Of a DNA stretch of 64,000 nucleotides, positions 233 to 32,003 are shown piece by piece. Where the stretch lies: positions 310,001-374,000 of the IMG/VR virus record IMGVR_UViG_3300032334_002567. The stretch is one strand, 5' to 3'. The translations under genes were made by a program, and so were the position numbers. The notes under the pieces were generated by a model. The model saw only the letters and a program-made list of their open reading frames with translations, did no database searches and was not told the DNA's origin. Position 1 is the stretch's first letter. The number at the start of each line of letters is the position of its first letter.

Positions 233-260
233 TTGACAAACTAATTGTACCCTGTAAAAT
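233..260 (+). promoter_or_regulatory. Sigma70-like promoter TTGACA-N16-TAAAAT straddling the first repeat copy
   Basis: TTGACA 233-238, TAAAAT 255-260. Confidence 0.45.
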
Positions 261-285
261 GGAAGCAACACCCCCCGGAGATCCA

Positions 286-558
286 ATGATGACAAGCGTT
301 TATGCGAAGATTACTGGTCGTGGCGAGTTTCCAATGGATATGCTGCGGTATGACAGTTGCAGCCCTGCTACTGAGTCCGACAGCTATTTGATTGCTCGCA
401 CCTTTCATGACTTTGATAGGTGGGAGATTTTTGTGAAGTGCCGCCCGCTGGAGAAGAGGCGTTCTCCTTGGACGGTTGGCAGGTGGGAGAGCTTCGGTTG
501 CAAGATCGAAGAAATTGACTATCATCCGCCACTTACCCGCAACACACAGCTTGCCTAA
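286..558 (+). CDS. Hypothetical phage protein (FPMDMLRYD motif)
   Basis: GGAG then ATG 286 after a repeat copy; track ORF 223..558 trimmed. Confidence 0.75.
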   Translation: MMTSVYAKITGRGEFPMDMLRYDSCSPATESDSYLIARTFHDFDRWEIFVKCRPLEKRRSPWTVGRWESFGCKIEEIDYHPPLTRNTQLA

Positions 559-564
559 GCTGTT

Positions 565-647
565 GCCGAAGTGGTGAAATTGGCATACACGCCAGACTCA
601 AAATCTGGTGCCCAAAAGGCGTGTGGGTTCGACCCCCACCTTCGGCA
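565..647 (+). tRNA. trnL: tRNA-Leu (anticodon CAA), CCA not encoded
   Basis: Acceptor stem GCCGAAG/CTTCGGC, anticodon arm CCAGA-CTCAAAA-TCTGG, long variable arm, T-loop GGTTCGACCC. Confidence 0.95.
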
Positions 648-672
648 TATTTAAATTGTACCCTAACAAAAC

Positions 673-747
673 GTTCCGATGGTGCCAACGCATTCGCTAG
701 GTGTTGGGCTTGGGTAAATGGTTGCCTTCTCAACCAGCCAACGGAAC
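673..747 (+). ncRNA. Putative three-way-junction RNA / structured 5' leader
   Basis: P1 673-683/737-747, P2 685-691/701-707, P3 719-724/731-736; begins 7 nt after the repeat core. Confidence 0.55.
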
Positions 748-777
748 ACTGATCTTAACCCCAACGGAGATAACCAA

Positions 778-1035
778 ATGGATAACTATGTTCATTTTGA
801 TGGTGAGTACGCTGATATTCCTGAGCTTACCCAAGGTGCTATCTTGCGGTATGTGCTTCAAAAGATTCCCCCCGGCAGTTTTCTGACGGCGGTTCTTTGC
901 AATGACCTCTATAACGCAACGGGTAGGGCAGATGCAAATAATCTGGTAGCTCTGCCTCTTATCGTGCGATGGTTTGCTAACAAGTGTCCGCATCTTTACG
1001 GTGCAGATAATATGTACAAGTACCTCGGCACCTAA
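778..1035 (+). CDS. Hypothetical phage protein (IPPGSFLTAVLCNDL motif)
   Basis: CCCCAACGGAG leader then ATG 778. Confidence 0.8.
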   Translation: MDNYVHFDGEYADIPELTQGAILRYVLQKIPPGSFLTAVLCNDLYNATGRADANNLVALPLIVRWFANKCPHLYGADNMYKYLGT

Positions 1036-1088
1036 ATAAAAATTGTACCCTATAAAGTTGTCCTTCTAACCCCCAACGGAGCTAACTT

Positions 1089-1400
1089 ATGCGTTATGCT
1101 GATTCCCGCTGTGAGATGATCGAAACTTACCAGCCTGATCACACCTACACCTTTGTCGGCCCGTGCATCGTGACCGGCAAGGAGCAGCGTGTCACGGTCA
1201 AAGCTCCCGACCTTTTCAAGTATCGGACGGGAGCATATGTTCAGGACGCTTTCCCCTACCTTGATGCCGCTGATCGTGAGTTTCTCATGACCGGCATGAG
1301 TGCAGAAGGTTGGCTTTTGACCTTCGGTGACGGTGCGGAAGACGATGAAGATTATGAAGATGATTGGGATGATGATGGAGAGCTTGGGGATCGGGATTGA
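1089..1400 (+). CDS. Hypothetical phage protein (QDAFPYL..DREFLMTG motif), acidic tail
   Basis: Repeat module and RBS upstream; stop abuts the next repeat. Confidence 0.8.
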   Translation: MRYADSRCEMIETYQPDHTYTFVGPCIVTGKEQRVTVKAPDLFKYRTGAYVQDAFPYLDAADREFLMTGMSAEGWLLTFGDGAEDDEDYEDDWDDDGELGDRD

Positions 1401-1440
1401 TTTGTACCCTAACTCTAACTCTACTCCCAAAGGATTATCT

Positions 1441-1902
1441 ATGACAGTTCACGATAAGATGTGCACACCTAGTGGCTTACAGGAATTGGCAAAAGAATGG
1501 TGGGACTGTCTTGTCTCTGATGAGCTAGCTTTGAGCCTAAGTACAGCTTATATAAAAGCAACTGAAGGATTCGAACCTGAAGCGGGCTCGTTCTCTGTTC
1601 CTTGTCTATGCTCCTCCGGCACAGGCCAGATTGTTTGGTTGAAAAACAGAATCAATGATTTGAATCTATTGCCCGTAGGCGAAGCACGAATGCACGACGA
1701 TATCCCAGCTGTTACAACAGCTGTATTGCATGTAGGTTTTTTGTCTGTGTTCGAAACAGAAGAAATGGTTTGCCGATTACGCAACGAGCCTCTACGTCAA
1801 AATTGTGAAAACCCAGCAAGGTCGAAGATGTTTGCGACAGCTCAAAAGCAGGATGTGGCTCCGATAGATCGTACTGCGTCAATCGTTTCTAGATCAAATT
1901 GA
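1441..1902 (+). CDS. Hypothetical protein
   Basis: AAGGA RBS then ATG 1441 after the repeat at 1400. Confidence 0.65.
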   Translation: MTVHDKMCTPSGLQELAKEWWDCLVSDELALSLSTAYIKATEGFEPEAGSFSVPCLCSSGTGQIVWLKNRINDLNLLPVGEARMHDDIPAVTTAVLHVGFLSVFETEEMVCRLRNEPLRQNCENPARSKMFATAQKQDVAPIDRTASIVSRSN

Positions 1903-2096
1903 TTTGGGAGTATCAAATGTCAATGAAAGTTTCTGAACTATCTGATTGGATCAAAACTCTTGAAAAAGATGATGTAGTCTGGATAGATGAGGGTGGACTA
2001 AACCTAGAAACTAAGGATGGAGCCTATCTGGAACTAGGCGGCAAAGTAGAGTTCTACGACGAAGATGATGACCCAAAAGGATTCTGGAGTAAATAA
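1899..2096 (+). CDS. Hypothetical protein
   Basis: Overlaps the upstream stop; start could be ATG 1917. Confidence 0.55.
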   Translation: MIWEYQMSMKVSELSDWIKTLEKDDVVWIDEGGLNLETKDGAYLELGGKVEFYDEDDDPKGFWSK

Positions 2097-2098
2097 CA

Positions 2099-2257
2099 AT
2101 GACTAAGCCTTACTTGGTGATCAAAAACAACTGCGCCATTGGTGTTGTTTTTGCTGGGAGTGAAACCGATGCACTCGTTATCGCTTGTGAAGCATATTGC
2201 GATGGCGTGACTGTAGAGTTGAGCCGTCAAAGTGGTCTAAGATCAGTAGGAGTATAA
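2099..2257 (+). CDS. Small hypothetical protein (52 aa)
   Basis: ATG 2099 to TAA 2257 fills the gap between adjacent genes. Confidence 0.5.
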   Translation: MTKPYLVIKNNCAIGVVFAGSETDALVIACEAYCDGVTVELSRQSGLRSVGV

Positions 2258-2260
2258 CCT

Positions 2261-2566
2261 ATGGAATGGATTAGTTTTTTCGGGCCACGTCGTCCAATCA
2301 ACGGACAAAAGATTTTCTATTACGGTGAGTGCATCGGTGTTTGGAGCGGAAATTACAGCTTAGACTGGAATGATCCAGTTAGCCCCCATCGGATAATTTG
2401 TGGGGAAAAAAGCAATGATGAAGTCTTAGCCGAATATGGTTTGAACAATCTGACTATGATTGTAGACCGTATGGATGCACCGTGGTGGATGCCTGACGAG
2501 GGACAGGAAAAGCCCAAAAAGCCAGAAACCGACTACCCAAAGGATTATCCAAGTCGAGAGGGCTAA
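2261..2566 (+). CDS. Hypothetical protein
   Basis: AGGAG RBS; ORF track. Confidence 0.7.
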   Translation: MEWISFFGPRRPINGQKIFYYGECIGVWSGNYSLDWNDPVSPHRIICGEKSNDEVLAEYGLNNLTMIVDRMDAPWWMPDEGQEKPKKPETDYPKDYPSREG

Positions 2567-2654
2567 ATAAAACCATTGTACCCTAAAAGGTCGTTACCCC
2601 ATTTGCACTTGAACGACTAATTCCTAAAATCTAAAATATAAGGGGAGAATAAAA

Positions 2655-2855
2655 ATGCAAAAGTTTATTTTTACAAACGTGAAGATCGAATACTTTGATT
2701 GTGAATGCTGCAAAGGTATGAAACCACCAGCAACCACAGTTTCAGAAGGGCCATTTGAGATAATGGCTCCAATTGGCATCAAACCAGAAAACATCGTAAA
2801 TGAGTTTTTTGGCGAGCCGGGACGAGTCATTGATTTCGAATGTCAAATTACCTAA
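2655..2855 (+). CDS. Hypothetical protein
   Basis: GGGGAG RBS; ORF track. Confidence 0.65.
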   Translation: MQKFIFTNVKIEYFDCECCKGMKPPATTVSEGPFEIMAPIGIKPENIVNEFFGEPGRVIDFECQIT

Positions 2856-2878
2856 TTCATCATTATTGACATTCAAGC

Positions 2879-2912
2879 AGACCCTTGAGATAAATCTCAG
2901 GGGTCTATTTTT
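2879..2912 (+). terminator. Rho-independent terminator
   Basis: AGACCCTTGAGA-TAAA-TCTCAGGGGTCT followed by a T-rich tract. Confidence 0.75.
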
Positions 2913-2935
2913 ATTTGTACCCTAAGGAGAATATC

Positions 2936-3229
2936 ATGTACAAACTATTTATCGATGATGTTCGTGACGCCCCGGATAGCCTCTGGACGGTGTGCAGATC
3001 ATCACATCAGGCTATTGAGCATATCAAGATTTATGGTATGCCAGCCCTTATCAGCTTTGACCATGACTTGGGCGGAGAAGACACCACCATGCTTTTCCTC
3101 CGTAGACTTGTGAACGAGCTTTGGGACGGTAAAACACCACCACCCAATTACAGAGTTCATTCTGCGAATCCTGTTGGCAGCGAAAATATCAAAAGCTTTA
3201 TGGAGAGTTGGAAAAAGTCGATTGAATAA
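2936..3229 (+). CDS. Cyclic-phosphate-processing receiver (cREC-type) domain protein
   Basis: KLFIDDVR, ISFDHDLG and VHSANPVG motifs. Confidence 0.8.
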   Translation: MYKLFIDDVRDAPDSLWTVCRSSHQAIEHIKIYGMPALISFDHDLGGEDTTMLFLRRLVNELWDGKTPPPNYRVHSANPVGSENIKSFMESWKKSIE

Positions 3230-3338
3230 ACTCTAAGGAGAGAGAAATGTCTAAGTTGACTCTTGGCGATAAGATTCTTTTCACTGCGTGTTTTATTGCT
3301 GGCTGTTTTGTTGTTTATCTAATCAACTAAGGAATAAA

Positions 3339-3605
3339 ATGACTGAGCTTTTTACCGACATTGCTATTGTTGTTATGTATCTTGGAACTGCTTTGGCGCT
3401 TTGTGCATTTGTTGGAATTGTTCTTCGGGTTGGTGATTTGGGATTTTGGTGCTTTGGGAAACTTGACGAATATCTGCAAGATAGGCATTTTGAGAAGCTC
3501 AGGAAGTCTTGGGAAAAGAATTGTACCCTAAAAGATTGTTCTAAACCCCAACGGAGTTCTTATGTCAATTCATATAACCAACTTTGTTCGACGCCAGACT
3601 GCTGA
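3339..3605 (+). CDS. Hypothetical membrane protein whose 3' end reads through the repeat at 3519
   Basis: N-terminal hydrophobic helix; AAGGA RBS. Confidence 0.55.
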   Translation: MTELFTDIAIVVMYLGTALALCAFVGIVLRVGDLGFWCFGKLDEYLQDRHFEKLRKSWEKNCTLKDCSKPQRSSYVNSYNQLCSTPDC

Positions 3606-4119
3606 AAGCCATTTCTCGCATTGGACGATCAGTGACGAGGAACTTATCTTTTGTGTTAGCCAGAACATGGACAGGGCTCATAAGGGATACCGGGATGGAG
3701 TTATTCTTGTCCCGATTAGTCCCGAAGGCTTTTTCAGTGCTGTGGCTGAATTGCAGATCAATGACACTCTGAATGGTTCTTTTTCTTGCCGTCGAGCTGG
3801 CGAGGAACCACGAAAAAGTGTCTTTATGATTGGTGAGAAGGTTCCCGCCCAAACAGTCTGGGTTGTTTTATACGCTCATCACGTTCTTGCTGAAAAGAAT
3901 GAAAACGAGAGCGATGCCGATTATGAAATTGTGAGCATCAACACCAGTCCTAGTGTTGATCAAAAGCCTGCTCCTATGCCGCCGGAAACGCTTATTGCTA
4001 ATCACTTTGAGCTTTCTGGGGGAACTGCAACAAATATGACCGATAGCGAGTTTGTTGCATCGCTGCGTGAAAGTGTGATGTATTGGAAAGATAAAGTTCA
4101 GGTTCAGCCTAACCTCTAA
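3562..4119 (+). CDS. DUF3228-family protein
   Basis: GYRDGVILVP, RRAGEEPR, VVLY.HHVL.E.NE, YEIVSIN and PM.PET....GGT motifs. Confidence 0.75.
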   Translation: MSIHITNFVRRQTAESHFSHWTISDEELIFCVSQNMDRAHKGYRDGVILVPISPEGFFSAVAELQINDTLNGSFSCRRAGEEPRKSVFMIGEKVPAQTVWVVLYAHHVLAEKNENESDADYEIVSINTSPSVDQKPAPMPPETLIANHFELSGGTATNMTDSEFVASLRESVMYWKDKVQVQPNL

Positions 4120-4128
4120 AGGAATAAC

Positions 4129-4401
4129 ATGAGAAGCACAACATTGCCTCTTTTTGAAAAGTGGTACGCAACAGCAACACCAGAGCAAATTGAGTTTGTT
4201 GATCAGGTTTATGCTATTTGTGAAGAAAACTACGAAAAGGGTGGAGATAGAATTGTTGAGTGCTATGGGCCAGAGGAAATCATCGAAGATTTCAATACAA
4301 TAGCTGAAGTTCGAGAGCACTGCAATTTGATGGTTGAGCAAGAGCTAAATGCCCGTTGGGGCGAAGATGATGACCCAGAGTTGAGTCGTGGCAAGTGGTG
4401 A
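4129..4401 (+). CDS. Hypothetical acidic protein
   Basis: AAAGGA RBS; ORF track. Confidence 0.75.
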   Translation: MRSTTLPLFEKWYATATPEQIEFVDQVYAICEENYEKGGDRIVECYGPEEIIEDFNTIAEVREHCNLMVEQELNARWGEDDDPELSRGKW

Positions 4402-4459
4402 GTTCTAAATAAATTGTACCCTAACAGGTTGTTCCGAATCACCCCTAACGGAGACAATC

Positions 4460-5023
4460 ATGTCTTACGAGAACGCTCCCCAGACGATTATGCTGGCGAC
4501 CAATTGCTGCTGCTGTGGTCGTCCGCTTTGCGATGCCATCTCTGTTGAGCTTGGTATCGGCCCGGAGTGCCGTGGTGGAAACAACGGTACTCTGACCGAG
4601 GAGCAGCGGCGTGAGTGCAACCAGCTTACACATGCTGCTGCCCTTGCGGCTCAGGAAGGAAAGATCGAAAACGTCCGATGGTGTTCGGAAGCTATTCGTG
4701 AGCTTGGCTTGCCAGAGCTTGCGGATAAGGTGGCTCACCGCTTTGTGAATGCAGAGCGGACGGCGAAGATCACCATTCGGATGGAGGACGGTATGCTCCT
4801 CGTCACTACGCCTTACAAGCGTTCGATGAAGGATGAGTTTACCGCCGCTTGGCGTAATGTCCCCGGTCGGCGGTGGGTTAGCCGGAAGCGGTGCAATGCG
4901 GTGCCTGTGAGCAGCAAGCCCCACTTGTGGGCTTTGCTCAAGCGGTTCTTCCCCGGCGAGTTCGGCATGGGCCCGAATGGGGTGTTCAGGGTTCCTGCCG
5001 AAAGCAAGAACGCCGCCGCATAG
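4460..5023 (+). CDS. DUF6011-like Zn-finger protein, C-terminus ...KNAAA
   Basis: C..CGRPL.D.IS.ELGIGPEC motif. Confidence 0.75.
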   Translation: MSYENAPQTIMLATNCCCCGRPLCDAISVELGIGPECRGGNNGTLTEEQRRECNQLTHAAALAAQEGKIENVRWCSEAIRELGLPELADKVAHRFVNAERTAKITIRMEDGMLLVTTPYKRSMKDEFTAAWRNVPGRRWVSRKRCNAVPVSSKPHLWALLKRFFPGEFGMGPNGVFRVPAESKNAAA

Positions 5024-5027
5024 CATC

Positions 5028-5068
5028 CAAACGGGGCGGGAGTGAAAATAATCCTCCCGCCCCGTTTG
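5028..5068 (+). repeat. GC hairpin (GGGGCGGG family), no U-tract
   Basis: 15-bp perfect stem CAAACGGGGCGGGAG/CTCCCGCCCCGTTTG. Confidence 0.8.
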
Positions 5069-5107
5069 TGATAAGTGATAAATCCCTTTACTCTTCTTTT
5101 GTGAATA

Positions 5108-5281
5108 ATGGAAAATATAAATTCTGTAGATACGATCAAAGAAATTGCAAGCCGTTTTTCTTGTATTCCCTTGAATGATATGACTTTTGCCGAAAAGGAC
5201 GTAGCAAATCTTTTGCTTGAAAAAGGATTTCTAACAATCGGTATAGATCATTGCGGTAAAAGAGTTTTTCATACTCTATAA
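5108..5281 (+). CDS. Small AT-rich hypothetical protein (57 aa)
   Basis: ATG 5108 to TAA 5281, ending just before a repeat copy. Confidence 0.5.
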   Translation: MENINSVDTIKEIASRFSCIPLNDMTFAEKDVANLLLEKGFLTIGIDHCGKRVFHTL

Positions 5282-5329
5282 AATAATTGTACCCTAGAAA
5301 GTTGTTCGATCCCACTCAAAGGAGTTGAC

Positions 5330-5455
5330 ATGGATCCCAACTACGACTTCTTTCTGGACTTCACGCAGGACTTGCAGAACGACGCAGAGTATAACGCTTG
5401 GCTCGACGAGCAGGAGCTTTACTCGCAACAGCAGGAAATGCCCGAAGACTTCTAA
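5330..5455 (+). CDS. Small acidic protein (41 aa)
   Basis: AAAGGAG RBS after the repeat at 5285. Confidence 0.65.
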   Translation: MDPNYDFFLDFTQDLQNDAEYNAWLDEQELYSQQQEMPEDF

Positions 5456-5615
5456 TTTCCTTCTAACCAACGGAGCTTTACCAGTGGTGTAAATACGAGG
5501 TTTTGGCGACAAGAGCCTCATCCAAGTCGCCCTAGGGCAGTCAGGCCACTGTCCTAGATTGTTTTTATTGTACCCTAGTAAGTTGTTCAATCCCAACCAT
5601 CAACCGGAGCTAACC

Positions 5616-5771
5616 ATGACCAGCTTTCTTCTGACTGTGAGCAGCTTTCTCGTTTCTGCCGCCCAAACGCCCTATCTGGACGGCTACTTTGCTGGTGCTG
5701 TGGCTATCGCCGTAACGATTGCGGTGAATGCTATTGTCATTGACTGCATCTACCGCTTCGGTACAAAGTAA
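5616..5771 (+). CDS. Small membrane protein
   Basis: CCGGAG RBS; hydrophobic segment; stop overlaps the next repeat. Confidence 0.65.
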   Translation: MTSFLLTVSSFLVSAAQTPYLDGYFAGAVAIAVTIAVNAIVIDCIYRFGTK

Positions 5772-5819
5772 TTTGTACCCTATAGAAGTGTTCAATCCTA
5801 ACCCCAACGGAGTTTCACG

Positions 5820-6164
5820 ATGAAGTGCATTAGCAATACTTTGGTGATTACTGCCGATATTTGGGAAGATCCGGGTGACTACCCTAATTCCCTTGCCGGT
5901 GGCCCGCTTCCCAGCCACTCTTACATTGAATCCAGCGGTGAACTGGTGCTGGAAGCTGAGAATAACGAGGAACTCGAAAGTTTCGACGCCCTAAACGATT
6001 GGTTCTCTGACTGGATTCATTGTGGTGCAGAGGCCAGCACTATAGGTGCATACGTTGATGTCCCCAGTTATTGGCATATTGACTGGGAGTTCAAAGTGGA
6101 GGGAAACATTCTCACCGTGACGGTCGGTGATGATTGTGAAGCTAACGAGCCAGATTATGATTAA
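5820..6164 (+). CDS. Hypothetical acidic protein
   Basis: Repeat module upstream; stop overlaps the next repeat. Confidence 0.8.
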   Translation: MKCISNTLVITADIWEDPGDYPNSLAGGPLPSHSYIESSGELVLEAENNEELESFDALNDWFSDWIHCGAEASTIGAYVDVPSYWHIDWEFKVEGNILTVTVGDDCEANEPDYD

Positions 6165-6211
6165 TTGTACCCTAACAGGTTGTTCTGATTTCCTCTAAAA
6201 CGGAGAGACAA

Positions 6212-6370
6212 ATGAACTGTTGGAAAAAGGCGTGGAATTGCTGCCTCAAAAACAAGGGCAGTGCAAAGGGCCGCAAAGAACTCAAGCGGGCCAACCATCG
6301 TGCCAACCGCCGTGTCGGTAAGAAGCTGGATAATGTTCACATTCGTCTGAACGGCTGGGACGTTATCTAA
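6212..6370 (+). CDS. Small basic protein (52 aa, MNCWKKAW...)
   Basis: CGGAG RBS; stop abuts the repeat at 6371. Confidence 0.7.
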   Translation: MNCWKKAWNCCLKNKGSAKGRKELKRANHRANRRVGKKLDNVHIRLNGWDVI

Positions 6371-6413
6371 AATTGTACCCTAACAAGTTGTTCGATCCTC
6401 ACCCCAACGGAGA

Positions 6414-6728
6414 ATGACCATGGCAATGTGCGAAGACTTCCCTTGTTGCGGACACGAGCCGGGATGCTGCCCCCGGTTCGATGAGAGCGGTCGGCAGTTG
6501 GATATGGTCTGCACTTGCGGTGCCAGACTGCCGGTTCACAATCGGTACAGTATTTGCGACCGTTGCCTTCGCATGGACGAAGACGGTTGCTATGACGACG
6601 ATTGTGAAACCTACGATGACGATGACTGCGAGGAAGACGACTGTGACGATGCCGATTGCGGTATCGAAGATCAGTTCCTCGACAGTTTCATGGAAGACCG
6701 CCTCAGTGGCGGCTTTTGTGAAGAATGA
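6414..6728 (+). CDS. Cys-rich (Zn-binding?) protein with acidic tail
   Basis: CEDFPCCGH, CTCG and C..C motifs. Confidence 0.75.
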   Translation: MTMAMCEDFPCCGHEPGCCPRFDESGRQLDMVCTCGARLPVHNRYSICDRCLRMDEDGCYDDDCETYDDDDCEEDDCDDADCGIEDQFLDSFMEDRLSGGFCEE

Positions 6729-6781
6729 AACACGGTTGCCGGGGCGGGTTGAGACTAACTCCCCGCCCCGGCCCGTTGGGG
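6729..6781 (+). repeat. AACACGG-GC hairpin-CCGTTGGGG element (copy A)
   Basis: Near-identical to the elements at 9689 and 11937. Confidence 0.85.
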
Positions 6782-6803
6782 CTTTCAAACAAGGAGACAA
6801 GTA

Positions 6804-7019
6804 ATGTCTGTATATTTCAACAAGCAAATGGCTAATCTTATCAACGTCTATGTCAAGTGTCCTACCAGTGGTCGAACGCTGGACGCAGATAGGCACGATG
6901 ACAAAGTATTGTGCAACTGCCCAGAGGCTATGAGCCGGGGCGGTACCCATATTGTTTCAAAGTGTGAACCGTCAACGGTCGAACAGTTCATGGTAGAAAA
7001 CAATTTTACAGAGAACTAA
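6804..7019 (+). CDS. Small Cys-containing hypothetical protein
   Basis: AGGAG RBS; ORF track. Confidence 0.7.
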   Translation: MSVYFNKQMANLINVYVKCPTSGRTLDADRHDDKVLCNCPEAMSRGGTHIVSKCEPSTVEQFMVENNFTEN

Positions 7020-7028
7020 AACCCACCT

Positions 7029-7066
7029 TAGGGTACAAATAAAGTAATTAAAATAATTGTACCCTA
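7029..7066. repeat. Inverted pair TAGGGTACAA-N18-TTGTACCCTA
   Basis: Direct reading of the sequence. Confidence 0.9.
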
Positions 7067-7102
7067 GAAAAGTGTTCGATAACCCCCAACGGAGAATCCC
7101 TC

Positions 7103-7333
7103 ATGCCAGTCGAAGTTCACACCAGCGGTTCTGTTTCTTATACCGGTGAAGACGGCGTAGCTCTTTTCCGTCTCATTACTCTTCACTCTGCCCTGCGCCT
7201 TCAGGCCACCACCGGCATGAAAGCGTCAAGGATCAGTGCTGTGGCTTGTGCCAAGCGACTTGGCTATACAGGCCGCACCGCAAAGGCTCTGCTTGCAGAC
7301 ATCGAACGGAAGCACCCTGAGCTGAAGAAGTAA
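7103..7333 (+). CDS. Hypothetical protein
   Basis: Repeat module upstream; stop overlaps the next repeat. Confidence 0.8.
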   Translation: MPVEVHTSGSVSYTGEDGVALFRLITLHSALRLQATTGMKASRISAVACAKRLGYTGRTAKALLADIERKHPELKK

Positions 7334-7378
7334 ATTGTACCCTAGTTAATCGTTCGACACCCCCAACAAGAGGATGCA

Positions 7379-7582
7379 ATGAGTAACATCGAAGACAAGA
7401 TGGAAGCAATCGAAAAGTGGCGCAATGACAATTTGTGCTTTCTCGACGGCCAGCCTGCAAAGATTGTGGGTTGGAAAGAAAAGTTTCCAATCGTGAGCCA
7501 AATCGACGGCCCTCTTGCTTTTGAGTGGTCGTGGGCCGCTGTCAACAGGATCATGTCCGGTGATCGACAGTTCAAGAGCTAG
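7379..7582 (+). CDS. Hypothetical protein
   Basis: Repeat module and GAGGA RBS. Confidence 0.8.
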   Translation: MSNIEDKMEAIEKWRNDNLCFLDGQPAKIVGWKEKFPIVSQIDGPLAFEWSWAAVNRIMSGDRQFKS

Positions 7583-7624
7583 ATCATTTGTACCCTATTA
7601 AAGCGTTCAACACCCCAACGGAGA

Positions 7625-7957
7625 ATGATCATGGAATACACCGAAGCCCTCAAAGTTCTTGGCAAGCGTGATTCGAAGAAAGTCGGAAACAACACCTACA
7701 TGATCCGGCTGGGTTCGGACATCGGTATTCGACTTCACAACACCGTTGTGGTGACCATCCATCCCGACAATACCTACACACTCAATAGCGGTGGATGGCA
7801 GACAGTGACAACAAAGGATCGGATCAACCAGTATTCACCGGTTCGTGTGTATCAATCAAAAAGCGTTTGGTATGTCGGTCAAGGCGAGCTGTTTTACGAC
7901 AACATGAAAGTCGGTGTCGTTTGCGGTGAGCCGCTAGCTTTAGGAATTGTACCCTAG
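7625..7957 (+). CDS. Hypothetical phage protein (TLNSGGW.T.TTK.RIN motif); stop TAG lies inside the repeat
   Basis: Repeat module upstream; 3' end reads GGAATTGTACCCTAG. Confidence 0.8.
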   Translation: MIMEYTEALKVLGKRDSKKVGNNTYMIRLGSDIGIRLHNTVVVTIHPDNTYTLNSGGWQTVTTKDRINQYSPVRVYQSKSVWYVGQGELFYDNMKVGVVCGEPLALGIVP

Positions 7958-7996
7958 TAGGTTGTGTAACCACCCCCAACGGAGTTGTGAAAAAAC

Positions 7997-8278
7997 ATGA
8001 TGAACTACAGCGGTTGTAACAGCTGGATCTACATCTACGCCATCGGTGGCAATTGGAACCCCGGCCCCAGCGGTGACGAGTTCGTGGGCTGTGCCTACGA
8101 CGCCTCCACTGCCCTCAGCCTGCTCGACTTGGTCGAGTTGAAGGGTGGCTATGCCGTCAGCCTGCACGGTGACAACCTGCATACGCTCAATGCCGTCAGC
8201 GGCGAGTGTGGTGTGCGGGAAGCCCGTATCATGTTCAAGCTCTGGAAAGAGAAAGAGGCGGTCGTTGTCGCTGGGTAA
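7997..8278 (+). CDS. Hypothetical protein
   Basis: Repeat module upstream. Confidence 0.75.
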   Translation: MMNYSGCNSWIYIYAIGGNWNPGPSGDEFVGCAYDASTALSLLDLVELKGGYAVSLHGDNLHTLNAVSGECGVREARIMFKLWKEKEAVVVAG

Positions 8279-8331
8279 CAATAAATAAATTGTACCCTAA
8301 AAGAGTGTTCGATCCCAACGGAGAAGCGATC

Positions 8332-8475
8332 ATGGAAATTAAATTCAACTTCAAAACACGTCAGTACGACGTTTGCATCACATTCTTCGACGGCAGAACC
8401 CCCATAAATGTTTGCTCTTTCTACAAAGAGTCGGATGCTCGCGCCTACGTCATGGTTCACAATGTCAAGTGTTAG
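8332..8475 (+). CDS. Small hypothetical protein (47 aa)
   Basis: CCAACGGAGAAGCGATCATG leader. Confidence 0.7.
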   Translation: MEIKFNFKTRQYDVCITFFDGRTPINVCSFYKESDARAYVMVHNVKC

Positions 8476-8534
8476 ATTCAATAAATAAATTGTACCCTGA
8501 CAGAGTGTTCGATCCACCCCAACGGAGTTTTGAA

Positions 8535-8687
8535 ATGACCGAAAACGAAATCAATGTTCTGGAAGAGGCCGCATCGCACATTCGAAACGATGCTTACAAC
8601 TGCGATAGCAGTCTGGATCGCAAGTATTTCGAAAAGCTTGCCGATAAGATCGAAGACATTATCGCCAAGCATAATCAAAGCAAATAA
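8535..8687 (+). CDS. Small hypothetical protein (50 aa)
   Basis: Repeat module upstream; stop overlaps the next repeat. Confidence 0.7.
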   Translation: MTENEINVLEEAASHIRNDAYNCDSSLDRKYFEKLADKIEDIIAKHNQSK

Positions 8688-8736
8688 ATTGTACCCTAGA
8701 TGATTGTTCGATTCACACCCCAACGGAGAAGCGATC

Positions 8737-9117
8737 ATGGCAAGCTGGTACACCGTCAGCGAGAGCAAGATTCAGTGGGCTCCCATCGGCACCCGTGTTC
8801 TGAAGACTGGCGAGACTAAGCCGAAGTTTTCCCGGATCGGCGTCCGTATCAATATGGTGGACGGTAGCTGGTGGTTCCACAGCTTCAAGCACGATAGCTG
8901 GACGCAACACTATCCCCGGAAGCAGGCCACCGACAAGCTGGGACGGCCCATTTTCGAGGATGGTCAGCCGCTCCTGCGACCGGAACGCAAGGAAACCTAC
9001 CGCAACTGGATGGCGGTTGTGAGAGAGTTCGGCACTCGACTGCCCGCTCTGGTTGTCGCTCTGGAAAACGGTCACGCCGAAGCTCTGCTAGCCGAAGCAG
9101 AGAAAACGGCAGCGTAA
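8737..9117 (+). CDS. Hypothetical protein, C-terminus ...EKTAA
   Basis: Leader CCAACGGAGAAGCGATCATGG, shared with the gene at 8332. Confidence 0.8.
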   Translation: MASWYTVSESKIQWAPIGTRVLKTGETKPKFSRIGVRINMVDGSWWFHSFKHDSWTQHYPRKQATDKLGRPIFEDGQPLLRPERKETYRNWMAVVREFGTRLPALVVALENGHAEALLAEAEKTAA

Positions 9118-9190
9118 AACGTGTGCTAGGGGCGGCAAGGCTCTACGGCCAAAAGCCGCGAAACTGCTAGCCGCCCCTAGCCCGTTGGGG
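9118..9190 (+). repeat. GC hairpin-CCGTTGGGG element (divergent copy D)
   Basis: GCTAGGGGCGGC ... GCCGCCCCTAGC stem, then CCGTTGGGG. Confidence 0.75.
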
Positions 9191-9253
9191 TACTTATAAA
9201 TAATTGTACCCTAAAAGTGTGTTGCGAACGCCCCTCTTTTTCAAGGATGAAAA

Positions 9254-9424
9254 ATGTACGCTCTGACGATGATCATAGGTTTTCTTGGCTACGGGTTCGG
9301 GTACGAGGGTTGTGAAAAAGGAAAGATATATTTCGGCGTGTATACCCCCAAAGCCGAATATGGTTGGGTCATGACAGAAAAAGACGTTTATCTGGATACC
9401 GTGTACCAGAAAACTTCTAAATAA
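9254..9424 (+). CDS. Small hypothetical protein (56 aa)
   Basis: AAGGA RBS; stop overlaps the next repeat. Confidence 0.6.
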   Translation: MYALTMIIGFLGYGFGYEGCEKGKIYFGVYTPKAEYGWVMTEKDVYLDTVYQKTSK

Positions 9425-9465
9425 ATTGTACCCTAGTTGATTGTTCGATCCAACCCCAACGGAGA

Positions 9466-9690
9466 ATGACAATGCCAAATATCAACTGGTTCGACGGTCA
9501 GAATGCGGTTGGCAAGTACGTTATGGAACTCATGTACGACGACGGTAGCGTCAGCTACATGAAAAATGAGAACTACGAGCAGATTTGCCACTACTACCGG
9601 CTTGCTTTGGAAATGTCGGAAGTGGTGGGTGCGACCATCTACAACCCAAAGTGGCAAGTAGTTTGCTCGACAGCACGGGCCGCAGCGTGA
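9466..9690 (+). CDS. Hypothetical protein, C-terminus ...ARAAA
   Basis: Repeat module upstream. Confidence 0.8.
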   Translation: MTMPNINWFDGQNAVGKYVMELMYDDGSVSYMKNENYEQICHYYRLALEMSEVVGATIYNPKWQVVCSTARAAA

Positions 9691-9770
9691 ACACGGTTGC
9701 CTGGGCGGGTTGAGACAAAACTCCCCGCCCTGGCCTGTTAGGGTATTTATATTGTACCCTATAGAAGTGT
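9678..9770 (+). repeat. About 90-bp linker (Ala-Ala-Ala-stop, hairpin, repeat core), near-identical to 11926..12024
   Basis: GGCCGCAGCGTGAACACGGTTGCC(T/G)GGGCGGGT...TTTATATTGTACCCTATAGAAGTGT in both copies. Confidence 0.9.
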
Positions 9771-9796
9771 CAGCCACCCCAAACACAGGAGCCAAT

Positions 9797-9958
9797 ATGA
9801 GCAATAACGAAAAACCGTACTGCTTCGAAGAAGCCCGTTTCAAGCGTGAAATGGAATACGTGGCTCGTAAGCTCAAAGAGGCGTTGGAACTCAAGGAATA
9901 CGCCAAACAACTGGCAAAAGAAAAAGAACAAAAAGAGAAAGAGGAAAGCCGGGACTAA
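9797..9958 (+). CDS. Small charged coiled-coil protein
   Basis: AGGAG RBS after the repeat at 9750. Confidence 0.7.
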   Translation: MSNNEKPYCFEEARFKREMEYVARKLKEALELKEYAKQLAKEKEQKEKEESRD

Positions 9959-9987
9959 CACCCCCGGTTCTCTTTTTTAGTCGGCCA

Positions 9988-10033
9988 TAGGGTACAAATA
10001 AAATAAAAAGGGATATACAATAATTGTACCCTA
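9988..10033. repeat. Inverted pair TAGGGTACAA-N26-TTGTACCCTA
   Basis: Direct reading of the sequence. Confidence 0.9.
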
Positions 10034-10040
10034 TAACAGT

Positions 10041-10155
10041 GTGAATGATTGCGAGGCCGCACCATCGGCACTACTGTCCGGTTGCAAACGGCAGTAACTC
10101 GCGGGAGCGGTATGCCGAAAGGCAGCGAGTGGTGCACCCCATCGCAATCGTTCAC
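10041..10155 (+). ncRNA. Structured ncRNA (~115 nt) occupying its own unit of the array
   Basis: 14-bp closing stem 10041-10054/10142-10155; GCACCA/TGGTGC; hairpin 10072-10096; CTCGC/GCGAG; TGCC-GAAA-GGCA; no RBS or ORF between two repeat copies. Confidence 0.75.
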
Positions 10156-10209
10156 AACAAAACAATTGTACCCTAGAAAAGTGTTCGATTCACCCCAACG
10201 GAGACGATC

Positions 10210-10545
10210 ATGACTTTCGTCAACCTGACCCCGCACACGATCACTGTGGTTCTCGACAATACCAGCGTGCAATTCCCGGCTTCTGGCAACGTGGCCCGTG
10301 TTTCCACCAGTCGAGTCTCTGGCCCCACGCTAACCGTCTACGGCGATTCTGTCGGTATCCAGACTTCCCGTGTCGAGTTCGGGGCAGTCGAGGGGCTTCC
10401 CGATCCCGTGGACGGCACGGTTTACATTGTGAGCGGAATGGTCGCAGCCCGTGTCAACCGGCCCGACGTTTTCGCTCCCGGTGAACTGGTGCGTGATGCA
10501 AACGGCCAGCCCACCGGCTGCAAGGGTCTGACTTGCAGCGGTTGA
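10210..10545 (+). CDS. Hypothetical phage protein (VNLTPH.I N-terminus)
   Basis: Repeat module upstream; N-terminal motif I recall from phage hypothetical proteins. Confidence 0.8.
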   Translation: MTFVNLTPHTITVVLDNTSVQFPASGNVARVSTSRVSGPTLTVYGDSVGIQTSRVEFGAVEGLPDPVDGTVYIVSGMVAARVNRPDVFAPGELVRDANGQPTGCKGLTCSG

Positions 10546-10602
10546 TTATTATAATTGTACCCTATAGAAGTGTTCGATCCCAACCCCAACGGAGACTCAC
10601 GA

Positions 10603-11043
10603 ATGAACGACATTCTTCTCGCCGCCCTGACCAGCTGCTTCAGCAAGATGGCAAAGGCCGCTGGCCCGATTGCCCCCGGCCTGCACCAGGTCGATGAAAC
10701 GATCACGATGCGGGTCAAGGGCGAGGTGCTGAAGTCGGACGACGAAACCTACGTCCCGACGATTGCGATTCCCGTCAAGGCCGTGATGGCTACGTTGCTC
10801 CCCCGGTTGGGTGCGACACGGGAGGCTGCGATGGAAACGCTTATCGCCGCCATGACTGAAGCGGTCAATCTGGACAAGCTGGGCGATGAAACGCTCAAAG
10901 CCCGGATGAAAGACGTTGACGCGGCTTTCGAGCATGTGCAGAACGTGCTCGACGCCCTCCCGCCAAAGACACGGACGGGAAAGACGAACGTGGACGTGAC
11001 CCTTGTGGTCGCTCCCACGCCCGCCGTCGCACTTGTCCCGTGA
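10603..11043 (+). CDS. Hypothetical protein
   Basis: CCCCAACGGAG then ATG 10603. Confidence 0.8.
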   Translation: MNDILLAALTSCFSKMAKAAGPIAPGLHQVDETITMRVKGEVLKSDDETYVPTIAIPVKAVMATLLPRLGATREAAMETLIAAMTEAVNLDKLGDETLKARMKDVDAAFEHVQNVLDALPPKTRTGKTNVDVTLVVAPTPAVALVP

Positions 11044-11045
11044 CG

Positions 11046-11098
11046 ATACGGCATCGGGGGCGGGAGGAACTAACAACTCCCGCCCCCACTAGCCGTTT
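11046..11098 (+). repeat. GC hairpin (GGGGCGGGAG/CTCCCGCCCC; copy E)
   Basis: Same stem family as 5028 and 6729. Confidence 0.75.
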
Positions 11099-11152
11099 GT
11101 GCAATTGTACCCTATTGGTTTGTGTGATTCGTCCCTTTACTTTGGAGCAGTT

Positions 11153-11335
11153 ATGGAAGCGAAAATCGAGAACGGCTTTCTGGTTCTGCGAGTCCCGATG
11201 AATGCAACGCCGATTCGTTCGTCTACCGGCAAGACTTTGGTGGTTGCCTCGACCTATGGCAACAAGGCAACCGAAGTGACGGTGGACGGCAAGACGGTCA
11301 CCGTGGGCGTCAACGCCTATATCAAGGCCGCTTGA
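11153..11335 (+). CDS. Small conserved beta-rich protein (S.TGKTLVVAST.GN), C-terminus ...YIKAA
   Basis: GGAG RBS; ATG 11153. Confidence 0.8.
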   Translation: MEAKIENGFLVLRVPMNATPIRSSTGKTLVVASTYGNKATEVTVDGKTVTVGVNAYIKAA

Positions 11336-11356
11336 CCCCAACGGTTCGGATCGAAA

Positions 11357-11393
11357 GCCGGAGGGGACAGCCACCCCCTCCGGTTCTTTTTTT
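11357..11393 (+). terminator. Rho-independent terminator, repeated at 12470
   Basis: CCGGAGGGG-ACAGCCAC-CCCCTCCGG followed by TTCTTTTTTT. Confidence 0.85.
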
Positions 11394-11402
11394 AGCCCGC
11401 CA

Positions 11403-11439
11403 TAGGGTACAAATAAATATATAAAATAATTGTACCCTA
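11403..11439. repeat. Inverted pair TAGGGTACAA-N17-TTGTACCCTA
   Basis: Direct reading of the sequence. Confidence 0.9.
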
Positions 11440-11482
11440 GATAAGTGTTCGATCTAACCTTCCCTCTCACTTGGAGTCAACG

Positions 11483-11551
11483 ATGATCGCTCTCGTTCTC
11501 GCGTTTGGCCTTGGTTTCGCCGCCATTTCTGCCGTTTACTGGGTGCTGTAA
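11483..11551 (+). CDS. 22-aa single-helix membrane peptide (MIALVLAFGLGFAAISAVYWVL)
   Basis: TTGGAG RBS inside its own repeat-bounded unit. Confidence 0.55.
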   Translation: MIALVLAFGLGFAAISAVYWVL

Positions 11552-11644
11552 AGCTCCCAGTCTAACACCTGAGTGATTAGGGTATAAAGTAATTGTACCC
11601 TAGATAAGTGTTCGATCCGATCCCACCCCAACCGGAGACGCACG

Positions 11645-11938
11645 ATGAAGAACGCTTTCGACCGCACGAACAGCATGAAGAACAAGCTCAAGGCCGATTG
11701 GAACCGGATGGTGGGGGAACTGGTGTCCATCCCCGCCGGTTGCCAGATTCACAGCCTGACGCTCACGCAGACCAACTTCGGTTGGGTCTACGCCCGGAAG
11801 CACGGCCAGCCCGTGCCGGTCGCCCAGTTGCGGAACGCCGCCGTGACGAAGGGTTACTGTATCCTGCACGACGGCCCCAACTTCCGGGTGGCCCTCCCGC
11901 CGAAGCGGAACGGGGAGCCGGTCAAGGCCGCAGCGTGA
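11645..11938 (+). CDS. Hypothetical protein, C-terminus ...VKAAA
   Basis: Repeat module upstream. Confidence 0.8.
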   Translation: MKNAFDRTNSMKNKLKADWNRMVGELVSIPAGCQIHSLTLTQTNFGWVYARKHGQPVPVAQLRNAAVTKGYCILHDGPNFRVALPPKRNGEPVKAAA

Positions 11939-12024
11939 ACACGGTTGCCGGGGCGGGTCGAGACTAACTCCCCGCCCCGGCCCCGTTGGGGTACTTGTAT
12001 TTATATTGTACCCTATAGAAGTGT
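11926..12024 (+). repeat. Linker copy C (Ala-Ala-Ala-stop, hairpin, repeat core)
   Basis: Near-identical to 9678..9770. Confidence 0.9.
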
Positions 12025-12054
12025 TCGATCCCCACCCCCAACCGGAGCCGCCCC

Positions 12055-12444
12055 ATGTTGAATGAAGCGTTCTTTCAGGTGTGCAACGATGCCGTCCCCG
12101 CAAAGTCCAGCTACGTCTCGCTCTACGTCAACGTGCCGTACTACGGTGGGCCGGAGGAAGGTGGATGGTGGGGCAGTGACACCGCACTAGTCGCTCACTA
12201 CAAGTGTGACAGCCAGCCCCATGCCGAAGCTGTGAAGGCCCGTGTCGAGGAGCTGGCCCAGCAGTTGAGCGACGATGCCCGCCGGTCGTTTGGTCAAGCC
12301 TGCAAGGCCCAGTGTGAATGGCTGGACGCACGTGGGTTGGACGCCGACTACCTGCCCGAAGTGGACGGGGAGGAAACCTACTGGGTCGCCGTCGAGGATC
12401 GCCCCGGTGAACACGCCAGCCAAGGGTGCAGGCACTACGAATAA
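12055..12444 (+). CDS. Hypothetical phage protein (YGGPEEGGWW motif)
   Basis: Repeat module upstream; stop abuts the next repeat. Confidence 0.8.
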   Translation: MLNEAFFQVCNDAVPAKSSYVSLYVNVPYYGGPEEGGWWGSDTALVAHYKCDSQPHAEAVKARVEELAQQLSDDARRSFGQACKAQCEWLDARGLDADYLPEVDGEETYWVAVEDRPGEHASQGCRHYE

Positions 12445-12469
12445 AATTGTACCCTATCAAGCACACCGA

Positions 12470-12504
12470 CCGGAGGGGACAGCCAACCCTCCGGCTTTCT
12501 TTTC
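12470..12504 (+). terminator. Rho-independent terminator, paralogue of 11357
   Basis: CCGGAGGG-GACAGCCAA-CCCTCCGG followed by CTTTCTTTT. Confidence 0.8.
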
Positions 12505-12513
12505 AGCCCGCCA

Positions 12514-12552
12514 TTGGGTACAAATAAAGTAATACATAATAATTGTACCCTA
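12514..12552. repeat. Inverted pair TTGGGTACAA-N19-TTGTACCCTA
   Basis: Direct reading of the sequence. Confidence 0.85.
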
Positions 12553-12699
12553 GTAATATACAGGAGGGTATTACAAAGATAATAATACAGAAATAAAAAG
12601 CGAAAACCTTTTAAAAAAATTGTACCCTAGGTACCCTCCCCCCCGCAATTACTGTCTTATTTTTTAAGTCGTCCTGACTTTTTTTCCCGTATTAGCACC

Positions 12700-31949: not shown

Positions 31950-32003
31950 TTTTACCCCAATCATTATTTTAATAAAGTTATTTATGCCTTATTATAGTAT
32001 TTT

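What the first reader, a model, noticed from the sequence alone, without database searches (positions are those of the whole stretch)
5028..11991. Family of GC hairpins without U-tracts directly after array genes
Seen: related stems with a GGGGCGGG/CCCGCCCC core at 5028-5068, 6729-6781, 9118-9190, 9689-9743, 11046-11098 and 11937-11991. They begin within a few nt of a stop codon, are often bracketed by AAC...GTT, and lack the T-run of the true terminators at 2879, 11357 and 12470. Four of the six follow AA-ending genes. Inference: 3' stabilisers or processing signals, polymerase-specific terminators, or single-stranded DNA recombination substrates.
Basis: partly seen in the sequence, partly recalled or inferred. 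Interest (0 to 1): 0.6.

Follow-up and report, generated by a model that had tools for sequence, protein, structure and literature searches.

The report
Stop-codon-hugging GC hairpins in phage gene array
Six related, very stable GC-rich stem-loops sit right behind the stop codons of the GC-richest genes in a huge phage's 50-kb array of small promoter-driven genes; relatives keep the pairing through compensating changes, so they are real selected 3' elements of a familiar kind, not recombination sites.

Summary
All six hairpins are where stated. GGGCGG..CCGCCC hairpins occur 5 times against 0.03 expected. They start 1-6 nt after a stop codon, whereas the T-run terminators start 22-25 nt after one. 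They lack a contiguous T-run, and four follow genes ending in Ala-Ala.

They form three sub-types of one family. A covariance model built on one type finds only these six sites in the 381-kb phage record, all on the + strand.

Metagenomic relatives at 70-95% identity keep the stems through G-C to G-U to A-U changes and whole-stem replacements. The loop motif (GAG-A-rich-CUC) and a nested inner hairpin stay put.

Two hairpins lie inside operons, before conserved genes with no promoter, so they cannot be efficient terminators.

Cassette gain and loss breaks at the promoter/5'UTR repeats, not in the hairpins. No integrase, Y1 transposase or RNase III gene is present.

Best reading: RNA-level 3'-end hairpins (leaky attenuators and exonuclease barriers), the stem-loop half of PeSL-like cassettes. 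No transcript data could be obtained.

The parts
5028..5068 (+). Hairpin h5028 (type B): 15-bp stem, 11-nt A-rich loop, 4 nt after the stop of the DUF6011 gene 4460-5023 (ends AAA*). It is followed by the promoter-less conserved ORF 5108-5281.
   Evidence: (-35.9 kcal/mol, z -7.6); identical in L116 and L120
6729..6781 (+). Hairpin h6729 (type A, site 1): outer ACGG/CCGU helix, 11-bp all-GC stem, UU bulge, apical GAG-ACUAA-CUC. It lies between genes 6420-6728 and 6804-7019 with no promoter in between.
   Evidence: orthologs in L133 and L139 have a different, fully complementary stem followed by a T-run
9118..9190 (+). Hairpin h9118 (type C): outer ACG/CGU helix, 12-bp stem, internal GGC/GC(U/C) helix, nested 4-5-bp hairpin, conserved unpaired AAACUG. 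It starts 2 nt after the stop of gene 8737-9117 (ends TAA*).
   Evidence: 66-nt copy at genome 288608-288673, 98.5% identical; same architecture with different stem sequences in L139 and L140/L142, shortened in L136
9689..9743 (+). Hairpin h9689 (type A, site 2): as h6729 but with a U-U mismatch in the stem. It follows gene 9472-9690 (ends AAA*).
   Evidence: in L116, L120, L122, L123 and L124 the ortholog is perfect, and in L116/L122 it is 100% identical over 70 nt to window 11926-11995
11046..11098 (+). Hairpin h11046 (type B): 11-bp stem, 10-nt loop, two outer helices that overlap the stop codon of gene 10603-11043.
   Evidence: (-37.9 kcal/mol, z -5.7); the outer helices change A-U to G-U and C-G to U-G in relatives
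11937..11991 (+). Hairpin h11937 (type A, site 3): follows gene 11645-11938 (ends AAA*). One stem pair shows the series G-C, G-U, A-U among relatives.
   Evidence: columns 32-53
9229..9241 (+). Remnant of a hairpin right arm plus T-run inside the 5'UTR of gene 9254-9424. In L139 and L133 the homologous gene sits directly behind the intact T-run hairpin, so this is a rearrangement junction inside a hairpin.
   Evidence: alignment
2879..2906 (+). Canonical T-run terminator, used for contrast; it starts 23 nt after the stop.
11356..11395 (+). Canonical T-run terminator, used for contrast; it starts 22 nt after the stop and is followed by an inverted promoter core.
12470..12505 (+). T-rich terminator closing the array. 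Its counterpart in L140 keeps the stem and the inverted promoter core but has no T-run.
245..12629 (+). The part of the promoter-gene cassette array that lies in the window: 33 of the 71 exact + strand TTGTACCCTA motifs in the record (68 of them between genome 272015 and 322620). This is the context in which all hairpins lie.

Best explanation
The hairpins are RNA-level 3'-end modules of individual cassettes in the phage's early-type gene array. They are transcribed as the first nucleotides of the 3'UTR. There they fold into hyperstable stem-loops that mark and protect the 3' end of the upstream message, acting as a barrier to 3'-5' exonucleases, and at most attenuate transcription into the next cassette.

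They are the stem-loop half of promoter-plus-stem-loop regulatory cassettes, analogous to the PeSLs of T4-type phages. Within a genome the copies are homogenised or copied as short modules that run from the stop codon to the 3' base of the stem. Between lineages the stems drift under pairing constraint.

Shown: the existence of the family, selection on pairing, the position at stop codons, placement inside operons, module copying, and the absence of a link to indel junctions. Inferred: the RNA strand of action and the stabiliser/attenuator activity.
For: - Structure under selection. In 15 distinct type-A sequences 99.6% of pair cells are standard pairs, against about 50-60% when the partner columns are slid. 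No shuffle out of 500 reaches the observed pairing or covariation score. Three pairs of the 11-bp stem changed on both sides.
- Stem replacement. Distant orthologs carry entirely different but perfectly complementary stems, while the apical GAG/CUC helix and A-rich loop stay.
- Type C architecture. It keeps a four-helix layout with different helix sequences in the window, L139 and L140.
- Strand hint. Single-sided changes observed in stems are C-to-U or A-to-G, giving G-U on the + strand. No A-C mismatch was seen.
- Orientation. All copies have gene orientation, and the covariance model scores the + strand far higher.
- Not efficient terminators. h5028 and h6729 are followed by conserved ORFs with no TTGTACCCTA motif. 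The hairpins start 0-6 nt after stops, where a terminating ribosome would cover the 5' arm. The T-run terminators sit 22-25 nt away.
- The hairpin belongs to the upstream gene's cassette. The window stretch missing from L120 (7902-9203) takes h9118 with it and ends at the next promoter; in L120 that spot is a scaffold N-gap, so this rests on an assembly gap.
- Module copying. A 66-nt copy at 98.5% identity sits behind an unrelated gene. The upstream proteins are unrelated to each other.
- Known parallel. PeSL stem-loops with polyG/polyC tracts next to early promoters in ORFan-rich regions (PMC2839356).
Against: - No transcript data.
- A comparison of folding energy on the two strands is not significant: 18 against 14, P=0.21. 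DNA-level action is therefore not excluded.
- Among the close relatives alone the stems are not significantly less variable than the neighbouring coding sequence: 11/142 against 129/1128 variable columns, P=0.20. The h9689 alignment in that test is noisy.
- The ortholog of h6729 carries a T-run in L133 and L139, and PeSL stem-loops were reported as effective terminators. Real termination activity is therefore possible.
- Only about 9 of about 100 array genes carry such a hairpin. A general stabiliser role does not explain that.
Confidence: 0.5

Rival explanations
1. They are genuine, efficient factor-independent terminators for the polymerase that reads the array, one that does not need a U-tract. 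That could be a phage-encoded or phage-modified polymerase.
For: - Orthologous hairpins switch between T-run and no T-run in different lineages. In L139 and L133 most 3' hairpins have no T-run and are followed by an A-rich stretch plus the inverted promoter core.
- Four of the six are followed by a promoter within about 20-60 nt.
- PeSL stem-loops terminate strongly in reporter assays (PMC2839356).
- From my own memory only: the array motif with its following bases resembles single-subunit phage polymerase promoters.
Against: - Two hairpins precede conserved genes with no promoter.
- No RNA polymerase gene was detected, while sigma-70-like genes are present.
- Canonical T-run terminators coexist in the same array.
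- The hairpins abut stop codons, where ribosomes would interfere with folding.
Confidence: 0.17
2. They are specific protein-binding or translation-termination-coupled RNA elements. The conserved apical loop and the type C internal motifs would be recognition sites. A hairpin placed against the stop codon would slow termination or tune the fate of proteins that end in Ala-Ala, a ClpX-degron-like tail.
For: - Loop and bulge geometry are conserved while the stems are replaced.
- Hairpin genes end in Ala-Ala in 5 of 9 cases, against 3 of 92 for other array genes (P=8e-5).
- 8 of 100 array genes end in Ala-Ala against 0.6 expected.
- The DUF6011 homologs in four other lineages all end in Ala-Ala.
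- A ClpP-family gene lies just past the array, at window 13612-14154.
- From my own knowledge: E. coli REP elements within about 15 nt of a stop codon were reported to stall ribosomes and trigger tmRNA tagging.
Against: - No candidate binding protein was identified.
- The loop does vary: ACUAA, AAUAA, ACAAAA, ACACAA.
- The Ala-Ala codons differ between genes and persist in homologs without an adjacent hairpin (L146). The tail is therefore a protein property that may only correlate with high GC.
- No Rfam family matches.
Confidence: 0.13
3. They are RNase III-type processing sites that cut read-through transcripts into monocistronic messages ending in a protective hairpin, as in the T7 early region.
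For: With the outer helices, the stacked stems reach about 17-22 bp and are interrupted by bulges or internal loops. The hairpins sit between cistrons, including two inside operons.
Against: No RNase III gene is in the record, and the host is unknown. Cleavage cannot be tested here. The stems are much more GC-rich and regular than known T7 sites (my own knowledge).
Confidence: 0.1
4. They are DNA-level elements: attC-like or REP/MITE-like single-strand recombination or transposition substrates that move cassettes or move themselves.
For: - They are copied as discrete short modules behind unrelated genes.
- There is within-genome homogenisation: the L116 site-2 copy is 100% identical to window site 3, while the flanks are about 92% identical.
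- One junction inside a hairpin is seen against distant relatives.
- In RB49, PeSL crossovers were mapped to the loop (PMC2839356).
Against: - 15 of 17 indel junctions lie in promoter/5'UTR repeats and none in the six hairpins.
- Only about 9% of cassettes have one.
- No tyrosine recombinase or Y1 transposase is present.
- No target duplications are visible.
- The wobble changes are tolerated on one strand only.
Confidence: 0.08

Closest known systems
PeSL cassettes (promoter-early stem-loops) of T4-type phages RB49/phi1, PST, nt-1 (PMC2839356, PMC4122927)
   Same: - Short intergenic cassettes: stop codon, G-tract/C-tract stem-loop, AT-rich stretch, strong promoter, Shine-Dalgarno, start codon.
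- They are concentrated around small ORFan genes in a plastic region.
- Cassette gain, loss and shuffling between relatives happens by recombination in the repeated regulatory sequence.
   Different: - There is no sequence similarity, and the promoter motif is different.
- The phage is an uncultured huge phage. A Gp23 search found nothing, but the control for that search did not ring.
- Only about 9 of 71 promoters are paired with such a hairpin.
- Two hairpins stand alone inside operons.
- Junctions fall in the promoter/UTR part, not in the stem-loop.
- Terminator activity is untested here.
Intrinsic (Rho-independent) terminators
   Same: A GC-rich hairpin just downstream of a gene. Orthologs in L133 and L139 have the full hairpin plus T-run form.
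   Different: - The window copies have no U-tract.
- The stems are far more stable than usual (-27 to -41 kcal/mol).
- They begin 1-6 nt after the stop.
- Two are followed by genes with no promoter.
REP/BIME elements of enterobacteria and pseudomonads
   Same: A family of GC-rich imperfect palindromes in 3'UTRs and between cistrons. They are known as structured mRNA elements that need RNase R/PNPase for decay (PMC12320835). Copies are homogenised within a genome.
   Different: - These hairpins are phage-borne, with 9 copies confined to one array.
- No RAYT transposase is present.
- There is no sequence likeness.
Integron attC sites
   Same: An imperfect palindrome at the 3' end of a gene cassette in a one-directional cassette array, with AAC and GTT near the two ends.
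   Different: - The AAC and GTT are not in pairing register with each other.
- Most cassettes have none.
- The cassettes carry their own promoters.
- No IntI is present.
- The junctions are not at GTT.

Membership tests
Intrinsic terminator | GC-rich stem-loop | tested here: met
Intrinsic terminator | Run of U (about 4 or more) within 0-2 nt after the stem | tested here: not met
   None of the six main stems is listed by the terminator scan. The tails read from the sequence are mixed or G-rich. The feature is met only in the L133/L139 orthologs of h6729.
Intrinsic terminator | Ends the transcription unit, so the downstream gene has its own promoter | tested here: inconclusive
   4 of 6 are followed by the promoter motif. 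h5028 and h6729 are not.
PeSL (T4-type phages) | Stem-loop with G and C tracts next to an AT-rich stretch and an early promoter, ending in SD and start codon | tested here: met
   4 of 6 in the window
PeSL (T4-type phages) | Flanks ORFan genes in a plastic region, and indels between relatives break in the cassette | tested here: met
   Met for the promoter/UTR part. The hairpin part is not a junction among close relatives.
PeSL (T4-type phages) | Stem-loop terminates transcription in a reporter | not testable with these tools
   Needs an experiment.
PeSL (T4-type phages) | Sigma-70-like -35/-10 promoter of a T4-type phage | tested here: not met
   The array motif is not among the sigma-70 consensus matches, which are at chance level. 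There is no Gp23 match, but that search's control did not ring.
Integron attC | R''/R' core sites (RYYYAAC ... GTTRRRY) that pair with each other | tested here: not met
   Read from the sequence: the 3' side is GTTGGGG or GTTAGGG, and the 5' side does not fit RYYYAAC. The pairing is ACGG/CCGU, one register off.
Integron attC | One site per cassette, with promoter-less cassettes | tested here: not met
   About 9 hairpins for about 100 genes, and 71 promoter motifs.
Integron attC | IntI tyrosine recombinase next to the array | tested here: not met
   No PF00589 match in the 381-kb record, and the control rang in 14 of 14 genomes. The record is 79% complete.
REP/RAYT | Family of GC-rich extragenic palindromes | tested here: met
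REP/RAYT | Associated Y1 (RAYT) transposase | tested here: not met
   No PF01797 match. The host genome is unknown.
RNase III processing site | About two turns of stacked helix with internal loops | tested here: inconclusive
   17-22 bp when the outer helices are counted.
RNase III processing site | Cleavage within the stem | not testable with these tools
   No reads could be obtained.
Recoding (read-through or frameshift) stimulator | Conserved ORF extension beyond the stop | tested here: not met
   The in-frame extensions are 8, 17 and 41 codons at the three type-A sites, with no conserved product (read).

The most novel reading that the evidence does not exclude
The hairpins are not generic 3' stem-loops. 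They would be a dedicated recognition module: a conserved bulge, an apical GAG-A-rich-CUC hairpin and, in type C, a conserved multi-helix core. Placed against the stop codon of selected early genes, many of which encode proteins with a ClpX-degron-like Ala-Ala tail, the module would let a phage or host factor couple translation termination, message fate and protein turnover.
Probability: 0.12. Interest if true: 0.7.

Novelty: new member of a known kind. Interest (0 to 1): 0.35.

Why it matters
The finding shows that the promoter-plus-stem-loop cassette design described for T4-type phages also organises a 50-kb early-type gene array in an unrelated, uncultured huge phage and its relatives. In that design the stem-loop is kept by selection on pairing, while the promoter/UTR repeat does the shuffling.

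It also yields a clean natural set of hairpins to test with. The set includes orthologs with and without U-tracts, and copies inside and at the ends of operons. These can show what a U-tract-less hairpin at a stop codon does to termination, mRNA decay and translation termination.

Tried and rejected
- IMG/VR scans: they returned only a 100% identical 146-kb contig. GenBank phages gave no DNA match.
- Nearest GenBank phage: by a baseplate protein it is LR756511.1 at 43% identity. It shows no enrichment of the array motif.
- Rfam: no family matches the hairpins.
- Attenuator-like alternative hairpin (right arm with the G-rich 3' flank): one compensatory cell only, reached by 72 of 500 shuffles. 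Rejected.
- 3' flank pairing with the cognate downstream 5'UTR: the flank CCGUUGGGG is the reverse complement of the consensus UTR CCCCAACGG. Cognate UTRs pair no better than non-cognate ones. Rejected as a specific interaction.
- Strand test by folding energy: not significant.
- Stem conservation among close relatives only: not significant.
- Scaffold N-gaps directly after hairpins in L116 and L122 look like breakpoints but are assembly gaps at a repeat.
- attC, REP/RAYT, recoding stimulator and phage RNase III: see the membership tests.
- Search for a phage RNA polymerase: PF00940 and PF00562, Pfam on ten ORFs of 600 aa or more, and PDB sequence search on the three of those ORFs that have no Pfam match all found none. 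The 4404-aa ORF has no Pfam or PHROG match.
- A structural alignment of type C by MAFFT is out of register, so the single-sequence folds were used instead.
- The genome search could not reach the records behind L142, L144 and L145.

Full report
**Context.** The window is bases 310001-374000 of a 381,443-bp IMG/VR virus record, rated 79% complete. The record holds 71 exact + strand copies of TTGTACCCTA. Sixty-eight of them lie between genome 272015 and 322620, which reaches window position 12620.
- The motif is preceded by an AT-rich stretch. It is followed, after 7-60 nt, by a Shine-Dalgarno sequence and a start codon, or in a few places by a tRNA gene. I therefore read it as a promoter.
- The array has 41-57% G+C, against 33-38% elsewhere in the record.
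- The record encodes sigma-70-like proteins. I found no RNA polymerase, tyrosine recombinase, Y1 transposase or RNase III gene.

**The observation.**
- GGGCGG-N(4-34)-CCGCCC occurs 5 times against 0.03 expected.
- Folding energies are -27 to -41 kcal/mol.
- Counting the outer helix, each begins 1-6 nt after a stop codon. The three T-run terminators of the window begin 22-25 nt after theirs (P=0.015).
- None has a contiguous T-run. The consensus scan lists 2879 and 11356 but none of the six main stems.
- Four of the six upstream genes end in Ala-Ala.
- The 'AAC...GTT' bracket is an outer ACGG/CCGU helix.

**One family, three types.**
- Type A (6729, 9689, 11937) shares about 60 nt from the stop codon to the flank CCGUUGGGG: an outer 4-bp helix, a 2-nt bulge, an 11-bp stem, a 2-nt bulge and an apical GAG/CUC helix with an A-rich loop.
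- Type B (5028, 11046) has the same GGGGCGGGAG core and an A-rich 10-11-nt loop.
- Type C (9118) has a long loop that holds a nested hairpin.
All score better on the + strand: 80-96 bits for type A, 30 for h9118, 20 for h5028 and 17 for h11046.
- Three further GC hairpins of this kind lie in the same array upstream of the window: genome 288616-288672 (a near-identical copy of h9118), 289931-289968 (a different stem with a similar A-rich loop) and 298108-298155 (an imperfect stem with a GGGGCG core).
- The nine upstream proteins are unrelated to each other.
- Their genes are the GC-richest of the array: mean 0.57 against 0.44, P=8e-6.

**Relatives.** The 97-aa protein before h11937 has one 90%-identity cluster in 5.8 billion proteins. 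Its members gave thirteen contigs at about 90-95% DNA identity to the array. A metagenome scan with the promoter/UTR pattern gave a second tier at about 70-80% identity, with the same promoter motif and a shuffled cassette order: L133, L135, L136, L138, L139, L140 and L142.
- On 15 distinct type-A sequences, 99.6% of pair cells are standard pairs, against 47-63% when the partners are slid. No shuffle out of 500 reaches the observed pairing or covariation score.
- Three pairs of the 11-bp stem changed on both sides. A fourth such pair, in the outer helix, is an artefact of the T-run in two distant rows.
- One pair shows the full series: G-C in the window, G-U in L116, L120, L121, L123, L124 and L125, and A-U in L113 and L114.
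- The orthologs of h6729 in L133 and L139 have a different, perfectly complementary stem and a nearly unchanged apex.
- Type C in the window, L139 and L140 folds into the same four-helix layout with different helix sequences. GGCU and AAACUG stay conserved and unpaired.
- Single-sided stem changes give G-U on the + strand, and I saw no A-C. However, a two-strand energy comparison is not significant, and stems are not significantly less variable than coding sequence among the close relatives alone.

**Terminators or not.** Three lines of evidence argue against efficient termination.
- h6729 is followed by gene 6804-7019 and h5028 by ORF 5108-5281. Neither gene has the promoter motif, and both are conserved in relatives. 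For 5108-5281 many of the substitutions against L116 are at silent positions.
- The hairpins sit against the stop codon, where a terminating ribosome covers the 5' arm.
- Canonical T-run terminators coexist in the array.

Against a clean dichotomy:
- The L133/L139 orthologs of h6729 are followed by 6-7 T and then directly by the SD and start of the next gene.
- The counterparts of the window's T-run terminators in L140, L139 and L133 keep the stem and the inverted promoter core but have no T-run.

The T-run is therefore a lineage-variable accessory of a conserved hairpin.

**Rearrangements.** Between the window and the close relatives I found 17 indel junctions inside the array that do not involve N-gaps.
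- Fifteen have an end within -10 to +51 nt of a promoter motif. None lies in the six hairpins (examples).
- The window stretch missing from L120 (7902-9203) carries h9118 with its gene and ends at the next promoter. In L120 that spot is a scaffold N-gap, so this example rests on an assembly gap. On that evidence the hairpin belongs to the upstream cassette.
- The hairpins do behave as copyable modules. There is a 66-nt copy at 98.5% identity behind an unrelated gene. The L116 copy at site 2 is 100% identical to window site 3, while its flanks are about 92% identical.
- One junction inside a hairpin is visible against distant relatives, at window 9229-9241.

**Mechanism.** I take these as RNA 3'-end hairpins that protect the upstream message and leak or attenuate transcription, the stem-loop half of PeSL-like cassettes (PMC2839356, PMC4122927). 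Confidence is about 0.5. Efficient polymerase-specific termination, a specific protein-binding or termination-coupled role, RNase III processing and DNA-level mobility remain as rivals in that order. No transcript data could be obtained.

**Novelty.** This is a new member of a known kind. The hairpins are real and selected, but their likely role is ordinary. The most unusual features are the strict placement against stop codons, the conserved apex and type C core, and the association with Ala-Ala-ending genes.

Noticed in passing
window 245-12629 (genome 272015-322620): A 50-kb one-directional array of 68 TTGTACCCTA promoter-like motifs (71 exact + strand copies in the whole record). Each drives a small gene or a tRNA. 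G+C is 41-57% in a 35% genome. In the window part a further conserved 5'UTR follows the motif (GTGTTCGATCC...CCCCAACGGAG). Relatives share the motif but have a shuffled cassette order.
   Followed up: partly
window 7029-7038, 9988-9997, 11403-11412, 11578-11587, 12514-12523: Inverted copies of the promoter core (TAGGGTACAA) sit just after terminators and form a palindrome with the next promoter across an AT-rich spacer. In L139 and L133 nearly every 3' hairpin is followed by this inverted core. Its function is unknown.
   Followed up: partly
array genes, e.g. window 4460-5023, 8737-9117, 9472-9690, 11153-11335, 11645-11938: 8 of 100 array genes end in Ala-Ala against 0.6 expected (P about 2e-7). 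The DUF6011 homologs in four other phage lineages (L143-L146) all end in Ala-Ala as well. A ClpP-family gene lies at window 13612-14154. This could be an encoded ClpX-type degron on early proteins.
   Followed up: partly
window 10034-10165: A stretch with no convincing ORF lies between two promoter motifs and folds at -60.7 kcal/mol (z -5.9), closed by a 14-bp terminal helix. It is a candidate promoter-driven structured RNA. It has no Rfam match and is absent from L120, L123 and L124.
   Followed up: partly
L144 (ENA KRAE22-1 scaffold_1547), whole locus: A different phage lineage holds 24 cassettes in 8.5 kb. In each, the stop codon is followed by TACCAACTAG and, in 19 of the 24, by a GC-rich hairpin bracketed by AACTAG...CTAGTT, with variable and compensated upper stems. 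This is an independent version of the same design.
   Followed up: partly
window 565-647: A tRNA gene lies inside the array (Rfam 57.7 bits). Relatives also carry tRNAs directly behind the promoter motif (L140 around 3383-3497).
   Followed up: no
window 38024-51238: A 4404-aa ORF upstream of the baseplate/tail genes has no Pfam or PHROG match.
   Followed up: partly
window 30477-31964 (- strand): A protein with a poly(A) polymerase/CCA-adding head domain (PF01743). It could act on tRNAs or on structured RNA 3' ends.
   Followed up: no
window 5456-5567: A 105-nt non-coding stretch with a terminator-like hairpin at 5532-5557 is missing in L116.
   Followed up: no
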